DNA of 63,618 bases, filler included, from Platydemus manokwari (lineage: Eukaryota): the NCBI GenBank assembly GCA_037951405.1. It is 6 parts of 6 records of this genome, joined end to end, with 100 filler letters (N's around TTAATTAATTAA, not from the genome) between each part and the next. Parts side by side here need not be neighbours in the genome. Positions count along the whole stretch, not along the records: positions 33,670 to 45,233 come from JBBMOY010595549.1; 5 more parts are not named here. One strand, written 5' to 3'. The translations under genes were made by a program, and so were the position numbers. Below are positions 33,923 to 43,130 of this stretch, one piece after another (within the stretch, counting starts at the first letter, position 1; every line of letters starts with the position of its first letter). Below the pieces are notes generated by a model. It searched no databases, was not told where the DNA came from, and was given only the letters and a program-made list of their open reading frames with translations.

Positions 33923-34367
33923 ATGGCTGGTGAAAATGATGGTATTCAAAAGTTATTATTTGCTGAAAAAGAAGCTGCTAAAAAAGTTAATGAAGCCAAA
34001 AAACGTAATCAGTATTAATTTTTTATTTTAATAATCTTGTTTATTAGAAAAAGCATTGAAATTACGCCAAGCAAAACAGGAGGCTCAAAAAGAAATCGAG
34101 AATGAAAAACGTATTATGGAGAAAGATTTTAAAAGAAAACAAGATAAAGTTAATAATAATAATTTAAAATATATATATTTGTTACATTATTTTTAGATAT
34201 TAGGTAGTAAAACTGATTACGAACAGAAGATAAATGAAAATACAGAGAGTCGAATTAACGAAATCACTCAGTTGGTATCGGAAAATAGAGATAAAGCTGT
34301 AAAAAGGCTTTTAGAATTGGTTTTGAATATTAATCCTGAGTTGCACACTAATTTTAGAAAGCAGTAA
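33923..34367 (+). CDS. ATP6V1G: V-type proton ATPase subunit G; join(33923..34004,34048..34148,34197..34367)
   Basis: Spliced product [45 protein letters not shown]...LLELVLNINPELHTNFRKQ* carries the GIQxLLxAEKxA...KQAKxEA...PELHxN signature. Two GT-AG introns of 43 and 48 nt. Missed by the ORF track. Confidence 0.95.
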
Positions 34368-35960: not shown

Positions 35961-37689
35961 GCTAGTCACTCACGAGTTGCATTGAAATTATCGTCGAACT
36001 TATTTTATCAGTTAACCTCCCACATTCTTGCTGAGAATTTATTTTATGTAGTGAATAAGGTCAAAGAACTATTTCTATTTAATGAGCTGTCGTTATCATT
36101 TAAGCGTTCCTGTTTAATTTATTTATCTATAATACTATTTATCTTTCTAATTTTATAATCGTTACAATATACTCATTTATTACGTAAAATAACAAAAATT
36201 AATTAAATTCAGATACCGACACTAGTTTAAGTGAAATATTCAATAGTTTGTCAATTCTCTTTTTATATGATTTTACCTACTGTTTACTCTTAATCTACTC
36301 TGATTCGATGTGTCTGTAAAGTCTGAAAGCTTTTGATTTGTCGAAAAAAGAAATTTAATTTTATAAGTATACAAACAATTTCGCTGCATACCACATTTAT
36401 AATCTGTGTTCAGATTAGAAAAACATGATCTTGTTGAGAGTGTGCATTATGAATTAAAAACACGCAACTACTTATCAACATTTTTTTAGTGATTATCGAT
36501 ACATTTATTCTGTATTTATTTGTTATTTGAGATTAGAAAATAATTTTTAAATTTTATAGTGCCATTATTTTTATGAACTCTTACTCTCAATTTTTTAATA
36601 TTTGGATAAATATTTTAATATAAATTTAATCATAAATTTTGGTTAATTTAATCTTGTAGGTGTGGAATTAAACATACATAAGCGTTTTTCTTTTCATTGT
36701 TTAACGATTGGAATAATGCCCTTTCAACAGAGTAATTGCTTTGTCAAAAGTTATATCGGGAAGATCATTGAAAAGGAAAATAGGAGGATAGAAGACATTA
36801 GTCGATAGAATTTGAACATTAAAAAATTAAAAGAAAAACAAAGTTGTTTTCTCATTCTCTATATAAATCAAATTATTTGATAAGGTAATGCATACTCACA
36901 GGAATTTTATACAGAATAAATATTTTATTTTGTTCGTTTTTACTTTATATTAAAATTATAGTAACGAAAATTATGATTATTATGAAATGAGTTTGATGAA
37001 AACTTATGAAAAATATTTCGGATTGCAAATTTGAGTTCTTTGTTTTTTATAATTGCTGGGTTATGGCGGGGGTTTGACAATTTTTAATCAGCTTGTATCA
37101 TTATATAAATTTTATAATTGCATTAAGTTTAAATGAGAAACATTTTATGAAAATTCAGGGGCATTTTGCGTCCAACATGAATATAAAATATAATATAAAA
37201 TAATATAATGTCCAGTTGGAATAAAATATTATCCATGCTTTAAATAAAATAAATCACCGTGCATTTAGTCACATAGAATATCTGCGAATGACTCACTGCT
37301 GCCTATATAATGTAGTGACAGCAATGATTATGTGCACTATTGTTACATAAGAAGAACCACAGCGCAACACACCTGATCATTCACTGTCGCGTTTAGGATT
37401 AGGAAATGCCCAGTATCTCCTACTGGAAGAACAAATAGTGAGATGATACATTTAAAATCACATATTAATATTTTTATCACTGTTGGTTTTTCAAACAACA
37501 ATTTAAATGTGAAAATTTGTATTAACTCAAAGTCTCAATAACAACAAATCTCTACGCAATTCACAAAGAAAATCATTCAAGATGAGACCAGCGCCCAAAA
37601 GTAAAAAACAGAATAAAGAGTAATCAATAAGACTGATTACTGAAATCACACATAAGGTAAGCACTGAAATCACCTACCAAAAAAGTGTA

Positions 37690-38330
37690 GCAGGAATCCA
37701 TGGAACTCAACCTCCTTTATAGAGCCATCGGGTGTGTCTGCTTGATGTCACGGATTTTTGTTTTCAATTTGCTGAATTTGTGTTTGTGGATCGATTTACT
37801 CGAGGTTTTCCTTATATCTCTCGTGCCATTGGCTGATATTAGAGCTTGATGCCGTTTGTAGGTATGTGCATGTCTATTATTAGCTTCTAAATATGGATTA
37901 GCATTAGAATGAATCTAATTGGTTAACGGTGCGCGTGTTTATCGGGTTTGTATTGACCCTTTTTATTTTTTTCGATGGAACAGAAAACAGCGAAAAGACC
38001 AGTTGGCAAAAAATCACATAAACATCTTAAAACAGCATGAAGATGACCAATCAAGAAAAGCCGAAAGTTTCTCGTGAAATCCAAATCCTTTTATGGGATT
38101 ATCTTATGTATCCCCTTGATATCTGAGAGCTTTGCTTTTAATTTGATAAATTCGCTCACACTTAGATATGTTAGCAATTTTCCTTTCATCTCTCGTGCTT
38201 TGGGCGAATATTGGTGTCGGTTGCCATTTGTTACTATGCAACAGTCGATTATTAGCTTCTAAATATGGATTGATATCTAAGAGGAATCTGATTGGGTATT
38301 GGCACGTGCATTTATTGAATCTGTTATTTA
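37690..38330. repeat. Diverged tandem duplication of a ~260-bp unit (37700-37950 vs 38080-38330), possibly LTR-like
   Basis: Shared blocks CTTGAT.TC, TTTTCCTT..ATCTCTCGTGC, ATTATTAGCTTCTAAATATGGATT and GAATCT.ATTGG occur in the same order in both units. Confidence 0.75.
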
Positions 38331-38935
38331 AGTAAATAAGACTATTTAATACACTTTTTAAAATGGTTTTCACTAAGTTGGACAATCCTTTACTGAATGG
38401 TTTAAACGCAAACAATAGAATATTGTATATCTTGAGTGTTGTAAATTCCATTTATATCAATTAATAATTTATTTTCTGACAATTTAATTCATTCGATTAA
38501 TGAACAGTTTAATATTTTTCACTAAATTTTACCTGAATAATTCCTGATTATTTAGATTGTAAATACTATTAGTAACGCAAATCGAACTCTTCCTAATTAT
38601 CTGAAAAGGAGCAAATTAGTTTGGGGTAACTAAATCGTAACCTTGTACTTCTTTGAATTATTCGTATAACAGGAAAATTTTGATTTAATTTAATTTAATA
38701 TTATTAAAACCCAACAAAGCTTTAAAGAATAGTCGAATATATAAATTAAAATTCGAATTAATTCTATAATTCTAATAAATTAAAATATTAAATTGTTTTG
38801 TCATATAGCCTGTAGAATAGGTGTAAAGAGGGGTTTGAAAAAAATAGTTTAAAAATACATTTGAGAAATAGGGGAAAAAATCTTTATTTTAAAAAATATA
38901 CTTAAATTATTATTATAACAGGATATCATTCACAA

Positions 38936-41900
38936 ATGGCATGTCCCAGAAAAACAACCATCGAAATAAAGATTCAAAACGTCGTAGGAAGTGCTCATTA
39001 TGGTACGCCAATAAATATGCAAGCAGTTGTGAATTATTTTCCAAATGTTGAAAAAAAAGGTCCCACAGTTATCATAGAATTAAAAAAACCGATTATAAAA
39101 CTTATCAGACTATTCGAAAACGGCAAAGCATTGTTTTATGGTTGTAGAAGGTTTGTATTTATTGAGTAATGGTTTATTTTCTTTTCTGTATAGTATTGAA
39201 GGTTTGAAAATGGGAGCTTTGAAAATAGCAAGACGATTGAAAAAAATTGGCCATAAAGTCAAAGCAAACTATCATGTCAGAGTGAATAACATTGTCACAA
39301 TATCAAGATTTCCATTCCAACTTAATTTATATAAAATTACCAATGATTTTCCAGCTAGCATATTTACTGCAGATGAGGAACTTTCGTTAGTTTTTATTTT
39401 CAAAATAAAACTTTTGAATAATATTAAGTCAGTTTGATATTGAGGCTTCTAAAACAAATATCGTATAGCTTTCCAATCATTACAGTAATCTTTTAAGGAA
39501 TACCTTCAACCCAAACAAAGTGACCAGAGTGTAAGTGAAATAATTGATGTGTAAAACCCAGGCTCATTTAATCATCGATTTTATAAGGTTTAAAAATAAG
39601 TCGGTAGTCCAAATGATTTGTGAAAATTATAAGTATAAAGTGATAAGGAATTAAATATGGAGTTCAAACAATGTTTTCATTGACCATTGTTAGTTATACT
39701 AATAAGCATGAATGATAATCTGGAATTCTCTGATAATGACATTGTCACATGGTTTTGAATCTGTAGCTGTTTCATAACAATTTACTCCTTGATTAGGAAT
39801 ATCAAACCTAGAATGTATATTTTCTAAAAAGTTCAACAATGAAGAAATCAAAACTTTTGAAAAATTTATAAAATTTCAATTTTAACCATATTTTGATATG
39901 ATTAATTGTTATTAGAAATGCTCGGATTTTTTATAAGAGCGAAACTGAGGTGGTAGCCACGATAACATATGCCGGAACCATCATCTGTTATGGTTAGAAT
40001 TAACATTTAAATATTTGTTAGCATGATATCTCAATTATAATCCAATTATTATCGGATATGTTTGAAATAAATATTCGAATAAATTAAATATTTCAACAAT
40101 TTTCATATATTATTTAATAAGTATATATTATTTACTCTAATATAAAACTATAGTTTATGAAATATACAAACCATAATTTTCTTTAATCGCCTCTTTAAGA
40201 GAAACATTATGCTAAATACTCGAATATTTTTCAATAGAATAGTTCACAATGTTCAGAAATCATTTCTCCAAATTCTCCCCTTATAAACTCACTCAACTGT
40301 ATTGGATTTAATAATAACTCCTACAAGAACCACTTTATCCTTCCAAATAGAAAAAATACATTACATCGAAATTTCAATGTTTTCTTATAATCCTCTGTGA
40401 TGATGAATCTATCGATATCCATAACAAATGTGCGTTTGCAAATTTCTTTACGTTAAGTACTATAAGATTTTCAAGACATTCTTTAAAACCATCCATGTTA
40501 ATTTTATTGTTTACTATATCAAGTCAATTCATGGCCACTGATAGTAGTAACGGTAACAAAAACTTTAAGATAATAATACGTTTCGTTGTGTTTTCATTAT
40601 TCCCAAATCTTCACTATTTGTGCTCATTCAATTTGAAGTATGATTCAACTTAATTGTAGTTTAATTGCCGGATTAAAATTGACTATTTCTAATTATTATT
40701 ATCTAATTAATATTTTTAAGTTGGCAATATGTCGGTATAATCTTGGTGAAAGTATTTAAACTCTGAAATTAATAATCCTCCTTCATAAGACAAATATGGA
40801 AAAGAGAAGAGGCGGGAATAGGATTTGAAGTAATAAAATCATTATCTACGCCGTTCCATTACCGTTCCAAATATGAGGCTAGAAAAGATCAATTAATTAA
40901 CTTACTGAGAGTTAAAAAAAACCCAATAGGCTGATATAAGACGTAGAAAATGAGTGTAAAAATCATAATGCTAGATAAAAATATTAAAGATAAAAACTAA
41001 AGAACCCAAAACATATCACATTTAATAAGATGTAAAATAGTAAATACTTGTAAAATATTTGATTGTGTCAGATGTTAAGAGCTGCTAAGTCAAAACTGGT
41101 GTGTATAATCTGAAACTGGAGCCAACTTTCAAAAAATTAAATGGAACCGGAGCCACATCTTTTTTGATTTGGTTCCCAAAGTCAGATTCCCGGGCATCCG
41201 TCTATTGGCTTCATTCTCTTTCGTAAGAATTGTAGCAGCTCATATTAATCCATACACAGTCTTAATTATGGGTACAGTGCAAAGATATAATCAGTCTTGT
41301 CGTGTAATTGGTCTCCAAATCAAACATCTGCACAGTAATATTCATCCATAAGTTTTAAGTTCTTCTCTGTCCTGTTATGGCATCACTCTTATATTATCTT
41401 TTTATGTTTGAAGCATTTACATAATAGTATTAATATCTTAGTAACTGGGTATGAGTAAATCATATAAGCATAATTTATTCTTCTTTCTTGGTATACTTGG
41501 GTCTTTCTTCTGTTAGAGTATTGTTTTATTGTTCAAATTATATTATGAATTCTATACTACCAGTTTAAGCGCGACGTCAAATCGGTAGGTGCGTGTATCA
41601 AAATATTATAATTAAAATAAATCAATAGAGAAGAATGTGTTAATTATTTTTTCATTCAAATTCATTAGAAATGCATACAACTATGATACAGAAAATTATT
41701 CAAAATCCATTTTCTTTAATCAAACTTAATTAATTTTGCGATCACTTAAAATTACAAATGTACTCAGACACACAAGTTAAAAACATGGGTCAAATAAGGA
41801 AAGCTCTTACAAACCTCCTTTGTGTTGAAAATATATGTTTCAAAATTTGAACAGATCTCTTTCTTATTACTTCTACTATTTTTTATTTTAAAATCGTCCT

Positions 41901-43130
41901 TGTAAAGATCTATTATACTTCTATTATTATCGTTATTTGAAGTTGCAATCGTAAGGAATCTTTAAATAAATTCTTGTTCTCTTCAAAGCTTCCCCTTAGA
42001 AGTCTGTTTAGGTGTGAACGAATTTTATGATTTTCCTAGTGCTTATATACTGTTCTCTATTACTAATTATGAATAATCATTTTTGTTTATGATCTTTTAT
42101 CAAAATTATTTCATAAATCCGTCTCGTATTAAAAAGTTCAATTTATTTTTCACTCACATTATTATTTTTGATTTCTTTTTCGCTCACATTTTAAAATTTC
42201 AACTTCGCCCCCATTTTAATTAATTTATTTTCTCCCACATTTATAATTTCTATTTATAAATTTTATTATTATTTCGTCATCATTTAAATTATATTTAATT
42301 TATTATGATTTATGCCTATAAATTTTATTATAATTTCGCCACATTGTATTTCGTCTACATGTATAAATTTTATTATTCCCAAAAATATAATTTTGCTCGT
42401 TATAAATTTTTATTCTTATTTTTAAAATAAATTTTACACATGAATGTTTTACATTTGAAATTATCAAAAGTATCTGCATATAAATATTATGGATTTCATG
42501 CAGAGTCTAACTGAAATAGGATCACAAGATGATGGAAAGAATCTAATCACAAATTGTCATCGTCAATATCCACTTTTCACTTTGATTGGGGCTTTCGTAG
42601 ACTTTTGTAGGATGATTGAGTATGGAATTGGGATCCCATCCCTTGATAGACTGAAGACTGGGATTTGAAAGATGATTCCGCTTGTCATGGCAATAATGAA
42701 TACATTGAAGATTGTTAAGTTGTAGAAGATATTGAGGGTGAACATTGTTTAGATAATATTGCTAGTGATCCAGTTGTGTAACACTTCTTAAAAATCTAGG
42801 AAATATGATTAGGATCCATTTCATTGAAACTAAAGCGGAATATGGTCTCGATGGATTGACAAGGAATATTATATTGACAAGTTATGGCAATATTAGTGCA
42901 TGCAAAGTTTTTTTGCTTCTTCAACCCACAAACGAAAGTTATTTTTAAAAAGTATTTGTAAGACCAACATCTATAAGACTTGTAAATCAATGATCAAATA
43001 TATCAATAAAGTAAAGATTATATATTTATAAATATATTACGTTTTAGTTTCAAGTTTGAAAGAAACATATTCTCGCATCACCGAAATTCTTACTTTAATA
43101 CAAAAATACAAGACTACCAAAAGACCTTAA
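38936..43130 (+). CDS. Highly divergent TBP-family protein (TRF2/TBPL1-like); join(38936..39150,39194..39385,39916..39992,43048..43130), 188 aa
   Basis: Two TBP repeats: IKIQNVVGS...LKKP...RLFENGKALFYGCRS...GALKIARRLKKIG and VRVNNIV...FPFQLNL...ATITYAGTIICY...EILTLIQKYK. Intron phases 2, 2 and 1 all join in frame; 567 nt. Exon 4 is less certain than exons 1-3. Confidence 0.85.
42120..42420. repeat. Degenerate array of TTT(T)CGCxCACATT-like motifs (probable TE subterminal repeats in intron 3 of the TBP-like gene)
   Basis: About 8 variants spaced 15-45 nt apart: TTTCACTCACATT, TTTCGCTCACATT, TTCGCCCCCATT, TTCTCCCACATT, TTCGTCATCATT, TTCGCCACATT, TTCGTCTACAT. Confidence 0.6.

What the first reader, a model, noticed from the sequence alone, without database searches (positions are those of the whole stretch)
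38936..43130. Extremely divergent TRF2/TBPL1-like TBP paralogue with a rewired DNA-binding surface
Seen: four exons splice to a 188-aa protein with both TBP repeats and no N-terminal extension. Known: TBPL1 is of similar size, canonical TBP uses four intercalating Phe residues to bend the TATA box, and TBP/TRF2 cores are normally strongly conserved. Here only the Phe in RLFENGK is kept. The RFAAV site reads KGPTV, the ELFPG site reads ELSNA, and the IFVSG site reads ITYAG. The YEPEL motif next to the TFIIB-binding stirrup reads ADEEL. The basic TFIIA-facing helix (ARRLKKIG) is retained. Inference: a fast-evolving, lineage-specific TBP-family factor that may run a non-TATA, cell-type-specific (e.g. 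germline or stem-cell) initiation programme.
Basis: partly seen in the sequence, partly recalled or inferred. Interest (0 to 1): 0.8.

Follow-up and report, generated by a model that had tools for sequence, protein, structure and literature searches.

The report
Very divergent TBP-family gene, not TRF2
This is an apparently intact four-exon gene for a very divergent relative of the TATA-binding protein whose first half is clearly TBP-like and whose second half is barely recognisable; it does not carry the hallmarks of the known TRF2/TBPL1 subfamily, and whether it is expressed is untested.

Summary
Exons 38936-39150, 39194-39385, 39916-39992 and 43048-43130 (+) have GT..AG borders and splice to 567 nt, giving 188 aa, and every quoted motif is present. 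Exon 1 alone passes Pfam TBP (29.7 bits, cut-off 22.9). Exon 2 alone hits only TBPs in the PDB, at the colinear position. The full model aligns end to end with archaeal and plant TBPs at about 23% identity.

Exons 3 and 4 have only indirect support. The main point in their favour is that intron 3 has the same position and phase as the last intron of cestode TBP genes. No RNA evidence could be obtained.

An exhaustive HMMER search found one real relative, a 1095-bp metagenome contig. It has 38% identity, the same start, the same two intron positions, and dN/dS about 0.23. This is therefore a small, fast-evolving gene family under constraint.

The TRF2/TBPL1 label is not supported. The N-lobe wedge residue is Phe, not the TBPL1 hallmark Trp. 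The pattern of Phe loss differs from TRF2, and no TBPL1 reached significance. The first stirrup is three residues shorter than in TBP.

The taxon and the number of TBP paralogues in this genome are unknown. The germline or stem-cell role is speculation.

The parts
38936..39150 (+). Exon 1 (215 nt, ATG to phase-2 donor). It encodes residues 1-71 plus 2 nt, covering TBP N-lobe strands S1-S5. It carries the S1 Asn (IQNVV), a stirrup shortened by three residues (NVE/KKGPTV), and the retained wedge Phe (RLFENGK).
   Evidence: Pfam PF00352 at 29.7 bits against a 22.9 cut-off. PDB TBPs match at 2.5e-7 with a 3-residue gap in the stirrup. The atlas nearest clusters are all TBP. An AF2 model of this exon (pLDDT 83) has TBPs as its top 43 PDB matches, with TM about 0.7 and rmsd 1.4-1.8 A. 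The homologous ORF P0002 on L001 has the same start position.
39151..39193 (+). Intron 1, 43 nt, GTTTGT..TATAG, phase 2.
   Evidence: L001 has an intron at the same position and phase (47 nt, GTTTGT..TATAG). The neighbouring V-ATPase G gene has introns of 43 and 48 nt.
39194..39385 (+). Exon 2 (192 nt). It encodes the basic helix H2 (SIEGLKMGALKIARRLKKIGHKV), the inter-lobe linker, C-lobe S1' (VNNIV, Asn kept), H1', and the start of the second stirrup (ADEEL).
   Evidence: Its only PDB hits are TBPs, colinear at chain residues 76-121. The local TBP-repeat HMM gives 9 bits, second of 642 fragments. The homologous exon in L001 gives a local score of 109 against a shuffle mean of 24.6 and sd 4.8, with 0 of 1000 shuffles reaching it. 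S1'-H1' resembles S1-H1 within the protein, z 3.8.
39386..39915 (+). Intron 2, 530 nt, GTTAGT..TATTAG, phase 2.
   Evidence: L001 has a donor at the homologous position and phase (GTTAGC), so downstream exons must exist in both genes.
39916..39992 (+). Exon 3 (77 nt), a probable exon. It would encode C-lobe S3'-S5' (NARIFYKSETEVVATITYAGTIICY), with both C-lobe wedge Phe residues replaced.
   Evidence: It has canonical AG and GT borders and the correct phase. It is the best-scoring + strand fragment downstream of exon 2, 4th of 642 overall, at HMM positions 45-62. It aligns colinearly with TBP. The span from the YEP-equivalent to the donor is 94 nt, against 95 nt in cestode TBP genes. It is not significant on its own.
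39993..43047 (+). Intron 3, 3055 nt, GTTAGA..TTTTAG, phase 1, in the codon aligned to the Gly of TBP ..LTGAK. Without splicing the ORF stops after one more codon (..ICYG*), giving 162 aa.
   Evidence: Position and phase match the last intron of cestode TBP1 and TBP2 (VLT|GAK and IIT|GAK; exon sums 601 and 568 nt give phase 1). No Pfam hit was found in its ORFs and it holds short tandem repeats. Places 42398-42438 lie inside it.
43048..43130 (+). Exon 4 (83 nt including TAA), a plausible but unproven exon. It would encode the C-terminal amphipathic helix H2' (SSLKETYSRITEILTLIQKYK).
   Evidence: It has a frame-compatible TTTTAG acceptor. It ranks 1st of 97 alternative terminal exons by similarity to TBP tails and 4th of 97 by helical hydrophobic moment. 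Its size is close to the 80-nt last exon of cestode TBP2. The HMM does not discriminate it and it has no PDB hit.

Best explanation
This is an intact, selectively maintained gene for a small (about 188 aa) TBP-fold protein. It belongs to a fast-evolving TBP-related lineage that cannot be assigned to TBP, TRF1, TRF2/TBPL1 or TRF3/TBPL2.

Shown:
- The N-lobe is a bona fide TBP repeat. It keeps the central S1 Asn and the near-universal L5.1 wedge Phe.
- The basic convex helix H2 is the best-conserved part of the family.
- The C-lobe keeps S1' with its Asn and H1'. It has lost both wedge Phe residues and is otherwise barely recognisable.
- The N-terminal stirrup is three residues shorter than in TBP.

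Inferred mechanism:
- The protein forms an asymmetric saddle. It probably still lies on the DNA minor groove through the two Asn residues and a single Phe wedge.
- It cannot impose the two symmetric kinks that define TATA recognition, so it is probably not a TATA binder.
- It probably acts through protein contacts. These would be H2 and, in the window copy, a stirrup-2 acidic D-E-E-L patch resembling the TFIIB contact E-P-E-L. Through these it would nucleate or modulate an alternative initiation complex.
- Docking of TFIIA on the shortened stirrup is likely altered.

Which polymerase, promoters or cell types are served is unknown.
For: - Gene model: canonical splice sites, an uninterrupted 567-nt reading frame, and a length like a TBP core.
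- TBP homology of the individual exons.
- The full model aligns colinearly with archaeal and plant TBPs over residues 6-182 at 34-52 bits.
- The AF2 model of exon 1 superposes on TBP N-lobes.
- A relative on contig L001 shares the start codon position and two intron positions and phases. Identity is 38% over 134 residues.
- Between the two, pN is 0.39 and pS is 0.72, giving dN/dS about 0.23 with dS saturated. Rates relative to TBP outgroups are equal. Both copies have therefore evolved under constraint, and the window copy is not the decayed one.
- Conservation is concentrated in S4-S5-H2, 27 of 43 residues, against about 25% elsewhere.
- Intron 3 is homologous in position and phase to a conserved TBP intron. 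This ties exon 3 to TBP ancestry and predicts a short last exon.
- TBPL1 hallmarks are absent.
- No TBPL1 is among the nine hits of the exhaustive search.
Against: - There is no expression evidence.
- Exons 3 and 4 lack statistical support of their own. They cannot be found on the relative's 1095-bp contig. The C-lobe could therefore be built differently, or be decaying.
- The taxon and the number of TBP genes in this genome are unknown. 'Extra paralogue', 'TRF2 orthologue' and 'only TBP' cannot be separated by gene content.
- No TBPL1 sequence could be fetched by reference, so no tree was built.
- The D-E-E-L patch is not conserved in the relative.
Confidence: 0.55

Rival explanations
1. It is this organism's single, ordinary TRF2/TBPL1 orthologue, diverged beyond the usual hallmarks in a fast-evolving lineage.
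For: The size (188 aa) and the lack of an N-terminal extension match TBPL1 (PMC7221094). TRF2 evolves about five times faster than TBP and is reported in all 165 bilaterian genomes examined (PMC4180970). Three of four Phe residues are lost, as in TRF2.
Against: The hallmark N-lobe Trp is Phe here and in the relative. The relative keeps both N-lobe Phe residues. The retained Phe is not the one TRF2 keeps, and there is no Phe-to-His change. Identity to TBP is about 23%, against about 40% for TLF. In the exhaustive search TBPs reached E 1e-3 but no TBPL1 did. It is not even established that the organism is a bilaterian.
Confidence: 0.2
2. It is an unexpressed or decaying duplicate. Only the 5' half (exons 1-2) is still TBP-like, and the proposed exons 3-4 are chance open frames.
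For: The C-lobe beyond exon 2 scores about 2 bits. There is no Pfam, PDB or repeat signal for exons 3-4. The third intron, at 3 kb, is unusually long next to 43-530-nt introns. No RNA run holds the locus.
Against: Exons 1-2 are intact in two copies that are 38% identical. pN is well below pS, and rates are equal. The exon 2 donor is conserved in position and phase in the relative. The exon 3 donor falls exactly on an ancestral TBP intron position and phase. The spliced product has TBP-core length with no stop or frameshift. The same weak C-lobe signal is seen in the relative, so it is a family trait rather than decay of this copy.
Confidence: 0.15
3. It is the organism's only TBP: a Giardia-, trypanosome- or dinoflagellate-style divergent general factor in a fast-evolving, AT-rich eukaryote.
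For: The divergence (about 23%) and the loss of three of four Phe residues match Giardia TBP, which is 19-22% identical to other TBPs and carries F51Y, F68S and F148M (PMC12209930). Independent Phe loss in sole TBPs is documented for T. brucei and Crypthecodinium (PMC4180970). The taxon is unknown, and the piece is 27% GC with 43-48-nt introns.
Against: A sole, essential TBP would be expected to be conserved between relatives of equal base composition, yet the only relative is 38% identical. The neighbouring V-ATPase G is readily recognised by Pfam. Low gene density and a 3-kb intron look more like an animal genome. This is inference.
Confidence: 0.1

Closest known systems
TBPL1 / TRF2 / TLF (bilaterian TBP-like factor)
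   Same: It is a two-lobe TBP core of about 186-188 aa without an N-terminal extension. Three of the four intercalating Phe residues are changed. It evolves faster than TBP and is presumed not to bind TATA.
   Different: TBPL1 has a systematically conserved Trp at N-lobe L5.1, and its changes include Phe-to-His. Here that position is Phe, the C-lobe L5.1 Phe is lost, and there is no His. Identity to TBP is about 23% instead of about 40%. The first stirrup is 3 residues shorter than in TBP. No TBPL1 was detected by the exhaustive search with exon 1.
Giardia intestinalis TBP (gTBP)
   Same: Its divergence from other TBPs is comparable (19-22%). It has lost three of four wedge Phe residues while the saddle fold is retained. 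It shows unconventional DNA binding (PMC12209930).
   Different: gTBP is the sole TBP of a protist that lacks TFIIA and TFIIB. Here the gene count is unknown, the gene has spliceosomal introns, and it has a 38%-identical relative. This suggests a fast-evolving accessory factor. A different Phe is retained.
Trypanosoma brucei TBP-related factor and Crypthecodinium cohnii TBP-like factor
   Same: Both show independent loss of wedge Phe residues outside the TRF2 pattern, in organisms without TATA promoters (PMC4180970).
   Different: [quoted passage not shown] Here positions 1, 3 and 4 are lost and position 2 is kept.
Archaeal TBP (for example Pyrococcus woesei, PDB 1AIS/1D3U/1PCZ) and canonical eukaryotic TBP
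   Same: These are the best-scoring relatives of exons 1 and 2. The alignment is colinear across the full length. The S1 and S1' Asn and the basic H2 are shared.
   Different: They have all four Phe residues and a full-length stirrup, and both lobes are strongly conserved. Here the C-lobe is degenerate (8.9 bits against 43.6 bits for the N-lobe).
Cestode TBP1/TBP2 genes (gene structure)
   Same: They have a last intron at the same codon and phase (VLT|GAK and IIT|GAK, phase 1), followed by an 80-119-nt last exon. In TBP2 the third and fourth introns are the longest.
   Different: The cestode proteins keep all the DNA-bending Phe residues and are 74-92% identical within each group. Their other three intron positions are not shared with this gene.

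Membership tests
TBP superfamily (Pfam PF00352, two-lobe saddle) | The N-terminal lobe matches the TBP repeat profile above the curated threshold. | tested here: met
   Exon 1 alone scores 29.7 bits against a 22.9 cut-off. PDB TBPs match at 2.5e-7. The AF2 model of exon 1 superposes on TBP N-lobes with TM about 0.7.
TBP superfamily (Pfam PF00352, two-lobe saddle) | A second, colinear TBP repeat completes the saddle. | tested here: inconclusive
   S1'-H1' (exon 2) is recognised, and the whole model aligns colinearly with TBPs. The C-lobe scores only 8.9 bits, and exons 3-4 add about 2 bits. The spliced protein has no reference, so it could not be given to Pfam or AF2.
TBP superfamily (Pfam PF00352, two-lobe saddle) | A near-universal aromatic wedge (Phe at L5.1) is present in each lobe (PMC7221094). 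| tested here: not met
   The N-lobe has Phe (RLFENGK). At the C-lobe position the alignment gives Thr, with a neighbouring Tyr (ITYAG). Only one lobe meets the feature.
Canonical TBP | All four intercalating Phe residues are present (human F193, F210, F284, F301). | tested here: not met
   Only the F210 equivalent is kept. The others read Gly, Ser (or Leu by MAFFT) and Thr (positions).
Canonical TBP | The core is very highly conserved (about 80% from yeast to human, PMC3142196). | tested here: not met
   Identity to plant and archaeal TBPs is about 23%, with the N-lobe at 26 of 94 and the C-lobe at 16 of 87.
TRF2 / TBPL1 / TLF | Trp replaces Phe at N-lobe L5.1, and this is systematically conserved (PMC7221094). 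| tested here: not met
   The position is Phe in the window (RLFENGK) and in the relative (KIFDNGK).
TRF2 / TBPL1 / TLF | The characteristic set of three altered Phe residues is present, including Phe-to-His, with the remaining Phe retained (PMC4180970). Which Phe is retained comes from my memory: the fourth. | tested here: not met
   Positions 1, 3 and 4 are altered (Gly, Ser or Leu, Thr), with no His and no Trp. The relative keeps positions 1 and 2.
TRF2 / TBPL1 / TLF | The protein is closer to TRF2 orthologues than to TBP (orthology by similarity or tree). | tested here: inconclusive
   The exhaustive phmmer search with exon 1 found archaeal and plant TBPs at E 9e-6 to 3e-4 but no TBPL1 at or below 1e-3. 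No TBPL1 sequence could be obtained by reference, so no tree was built.
TRF2 / TBPL1 / TLF | The protein is core-only, about 186 aa, without an N-terminal extension. | tested here: met
   The protein is 188 aa. An in-frame stop lies 10 codons upstream of the ATG, and the relative starts at the same position.
TRF2 / TBPL1 / TLF | The protein binds TFIIA and TFIIB but not the TATA box. | not testable with these tools
   This needs biochemistry. Only sequence hints are available: a shortened N-stirrup, and D-E-E-L at the TFIIB-contact site in the window copy but not in the relative.
TRF1 / TRF3 (TBPL2) | The wedge Phe residues and TATA binding are retained, with very high identity to the TBP core (TBPL2 about 95%, PMC3142196). 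| tested here: not met
   One of four Phe residues is kept and identity is about 23%.
Sole divergent TBP of a protist (Giardia type) | No other TBP-family gene exists in the genome. | not testable with these tools
   Only this 11.6-kb piece is available. It holds no second TBP-like fragment.

The most novel reading that the evidence does not exclude
The window gene and its metagenomic relative are founding members of an unrecognised, rapidly evolving class of TBP-related factors that is distinct from TRF1, TRF2 and TRF3. The class would be defined by an asymmetric saddle. It has a constrained N-lobe with one Phe wedge and a conserved basic H2, a shortened TFIIA-side stirrup, and a degenerate, wedge-less C-lobe. 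It would direct a non-TATA initiation programme in a poorly sampled, AT-rich eukaryotic lineage.
Probability: 0.3. Interest if true: 0.6.

Novelty: new variant of a known kind. Interest (0 to 1): 0.42.

Why it matters
TBP is among the most conserved eukaryotic proteins. Each independent paralogue that abandons TATA-type DNA bending (TRF2, the trypanosome factor, Giardia TBP) has revealed an alternative way to start transcription. A further lineage would be a natural experiment in which half of the saddle is needed for what. It would keep only the N-lobe wedge and helix H2 under constraint while letting the C-lobe drift. At present the value is limited. The organism is unknown, expression is unproven, and only one partial relative exists.

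Tried and rejected
- **Word-index protein searches.** Exon 1 gave nothing. The exon-1 profile found only P0002 itself.
- **Exhaustive HMMER search with exon 1.** It gave 9 hits. P0001 and P0004 are low-complexity repeat proteins and were rejected as false positives. The rest are archaeal or plant TBPs, plus P0002.
- **Collection scans.** JGI metagenomes were scanned with exon-1 and exon-2 profiles, and IMG/VR with the exon-1 profile. All found nothing. The giant-virus lead from the atlas search was dropped, because the gene has spliceosomal introns and IMG/VR holds no relative.
- **Other checks.** Rfam on the piece found nothing. Pfam on ten other ORFs of the piece found nothing credible.
- **Exon 4.**
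- **Exon 3 on L001.** No candidate is significant. A tempting KIFPG motif at L001:1014-1095 was rejected as unsupported.
- **Internal repeat.** This supports only S1'-H1'.
- The 188-aa spliced protein has no reference, so it was not handed to Pfam, AF2, the atlas or the cluster look-up. Full-length analyses were done locally against TBPs returned. No TBPL1, TRF1 or TRF3 sequence could be fetched, so no tree was built.
- **Taxon.** This could not be determined.


Full report
**What is in the sequence**

They are 38936-39150, 39194-39385, 39916-39992 and 43048-43130 on the + strand. Each is bounded by GT..AG, and the intron phases are 2, 2 and 1. Together they give 567 nt, which is 188 codons plus TAA. 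Every quoted motif is present: KGPTV, RLFENGK, ELSNA, ITYAG, ADEEL and ARRLKKIG.

An in-frame stop lies ten codons upstream of the ATG. The only relative starts at the same residue. There is therefore no sign of an N-terminal extension.

**How much of it is beyond chance**

The 5' half is solid.
- Exon 1 alone passes Pfam's TBP model at 29.7 bits against a gathering score of 22.9, E 6e-7.
- It matches PDB TBPs, best Pyrococcus at 2.5e-7, with a three-residue gap in the first stirrup.
- Its nearest ESM-atlas clusters are all TBP.
- An AF2 model of exon 1 with a small TBP alignment reaches pLDDT 83. Its first 43 PDB matches are TBPs, with TM about 0.7 and rmsd 1.4-1.8 A. The alignment used was made of TBPs, so this is confirmation and not independent proof.
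- Exon 2 alone has only three PDB hits at E up to 10. All are TBPs, and all lie at the colinear position, helix H2 to strand S1'.

I built the spliced protein locally and compared it with the TBPs returned by the big search. It aligns end to end (residues 6-182) with archaeal and plant TBPs at 34-52 bits. Identity is about 23%, with the N-lobe at 26 of 94 and the C-lobe at 16 of 87.

**The weak 3' half**

I built an HMM from 15 TBP repeats. It gives the N-lobe 43.6 bits and the C-lobe 8.9 bits. Of the C-lobe score, 7.0 bits come from exon 2. Exon 3 adds about 1.4 bits and exon 4 about 0.5. Exons 3 and 4 alone have no Pfam or PDB hit and no internal-repeat signal.

The indirect support is as follows.
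- Among 642 stop-to-stop fragments of the piece, on both strands, exons 1 and 2 are the only clear TBP matches. The exon 3 fragment is 4th, is the best + strand fragment downstream of exon 2, and falls at the expected HMM positions 45-62.
- Exon 4 ranks 1st of 97 by similarity to TBP C-terminal helices, though by a narrow margin (tied on summed score with two other candidates). It ranks 4th of 97 by helical hydrophobic moment.
- Intron 3 interrupts, in phase 1, the codon that aligns with the Gly of TBP's ..LTGAK. Table 1 of the cestode TBP paper shows the last intron of TBP1 and TBP2 at VLT|GAK and IIT|GAK. The exon sums there are 601 and 568 nt, which also means phase 1. That intron is followed by an 80-119-nt last exon (PMC13134418).
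- The span from the YEP-equivalent to that intron is 94 nt here, against 95 nt in cestodes.

This coincidence supports the frame and donor of exon 3 and predicts a short last exon. The 83-nt exon 4 fits that prediction. I rate exon 3 as probable and exon 4 as plausible. Without exon 4 the frame ends one codon after exon 3, giving 162 aa.

**Relatives**

The word-index search with exon 1 found nothing. The exhaustive HMMER search of 1.84 billion representatives found nine proteins.
- Two are low-complexity repeat artefacts.
- Six are archaeal or plant TBPs or multi-repeat TBP proteins.
- One, P0002 (84 aa, 41% identity), is an exon-1 ORF on a 1095-bp ENA metagenome contig, L001.

L001 has the same G+C content, 27.4%. 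It has the same start position. It has an intron at the same place and phase after GCR (47 nt, GTTTGT..TATAG). It has a clearly homologous exon 2, with 0 of 1000 shuffles reaching its score, ending in a donor at the same place and phase.

Over 134 aligned codons identity is 38%. pN is 0.39 against pS 0.72, so dN/dS is about 0.23 with dS saturated. Relative-rate counts against three TBP outgroups are equal. The two genes have therefore diverged under purifying selection, and the window copy is not the degenerate one.

Conservation is concentrated in S4-S5-H2, at 27 of 43 residues, against roughly a quarter elsewhere. No further relative was found in JGI metagenomes, in IMG/VR, or by a profile word search. 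The exact exon-1 ORF is not in the 15-billion-protein collection.

**DNA-binding surface**

The four wedge positions were mapped on plant TBP and read as follows.
- Phe1 becomes Gly, in KKGPTV.
- Phe2 is kept, in RLFENGK.
- Phe3 becomes Ser in the phmmer alignment or Leu in the MAFFT alignment. The two alignments differ by one residue.
- Phe4 becomes Thr, with a neighbouring Tyr, in ITYAG.

Both central Asn residues (the NVV or NIV motif of S1 and S1') are kept in the window and in L001. L001 keeps Phe1 and Phe2.

The first stirrup is three residues shorter than in TBPs in both genes. In the AF2 model the S2-S3 hairpin has a two-residue turn. The window copy has D-E-E-L where TBP has the TFIIB-contacting E-P-E-L (positions cited). 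This patch is not conserved in L001.

**Comparison with known families**

The published background is as follows.
- TLF/TRF2 is about 40% identical to the TBP core, and TLFs are 40-45% identical among metazoans (PMC3142196).
- Three characteristic Phe residues are altered in TRF2, including Phe-to-Trp and Phe-to-His. TRF2 evolves about five times faster than TBP (PMC4180970).
- The N-lobe L5.1 Phe is systematically Trp in TBPL1 (PMC7221094).

Here that position is Phe in both family members. The C-lobe L5.1 Phe is the one lost, and there is no His. No TBPL1 reached significance, whereas TBPs did. Two defining TRF2 features were therefore tested and not met, so I do not file this gene under TRF2. 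It may still work like TRF2, as a non-TATA TBP-fold factor.

Comparable divergence and Phe loss are known from sole TBPs of protists.
- Giardia TBP is 19-22% identical to other TBPs, has three of four Phe residues replaced, and binds single-stranded DNA (PMC12209930).
- T. brucei and Crypthecodinium also show independent Phe loss.

Whether this genome has other TBP genes cannot be tested from an 11.6-kb piece.

**Verdict**

This is a real-looking, intact, constrained and very divergent TBP-family gene. The TRF2/TBPL1 assignment is not supported. The functional story is untested.

The taxon is unknown. The piece is AT-rich, has introns of 43-48 nt alongside kilobase introns, and uses the standard stop codon. 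Only one public run holds the locus. The main gaps are expression, the paralogue count and full-length relatives.

Noticed in passing
window 33923-34367 (+): A complete V-ATPase subunit G gene lies here. Its three exons are 33923-34004, 34048-34148 and 34197-34367, giving 117 aa. Its introns are 43 and 48 nt (GTAATC..ATTAG and GTTAAT..TTTAG). Two of its exons each pass Pfam PF03179.
   Followed up: partly
window 37806-37899 and 38178-38271: A 94-nt direct repeat (76% identity, 372 nt apart) lies just upstream of the TBP-like gene. It has no coding signal. It may be a short dispersed or tandem element.
   Followed up: no
window 38910-38935: An acceptor-like site (TTATTATAACAG|G) lies 14 nt upstream of the ATG. 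L001 shares the ACAAATG start context. This could mark a 5'-UTR intron or a trans-splice acceptor. It was not tested.
   Followed up: no
L001 1-1095 (ENA ERZ27256860, k141_4905481): This metagenome contig has the same G+C content (27.4%) as the window piece and carries the only detectable relative of the gene. It shows that a related AT-rich eukaryote is present in that sample.
   Followed up: partly
window 42171-42255, 40130-40187 and 37198-37252: Short AT-rich tandem repeats with periods of 21-25 nt and 2.5-3.4 copies are present. Two of them lie inside the 3-kb intron 3.
   Followed up: no
   Followed up: no
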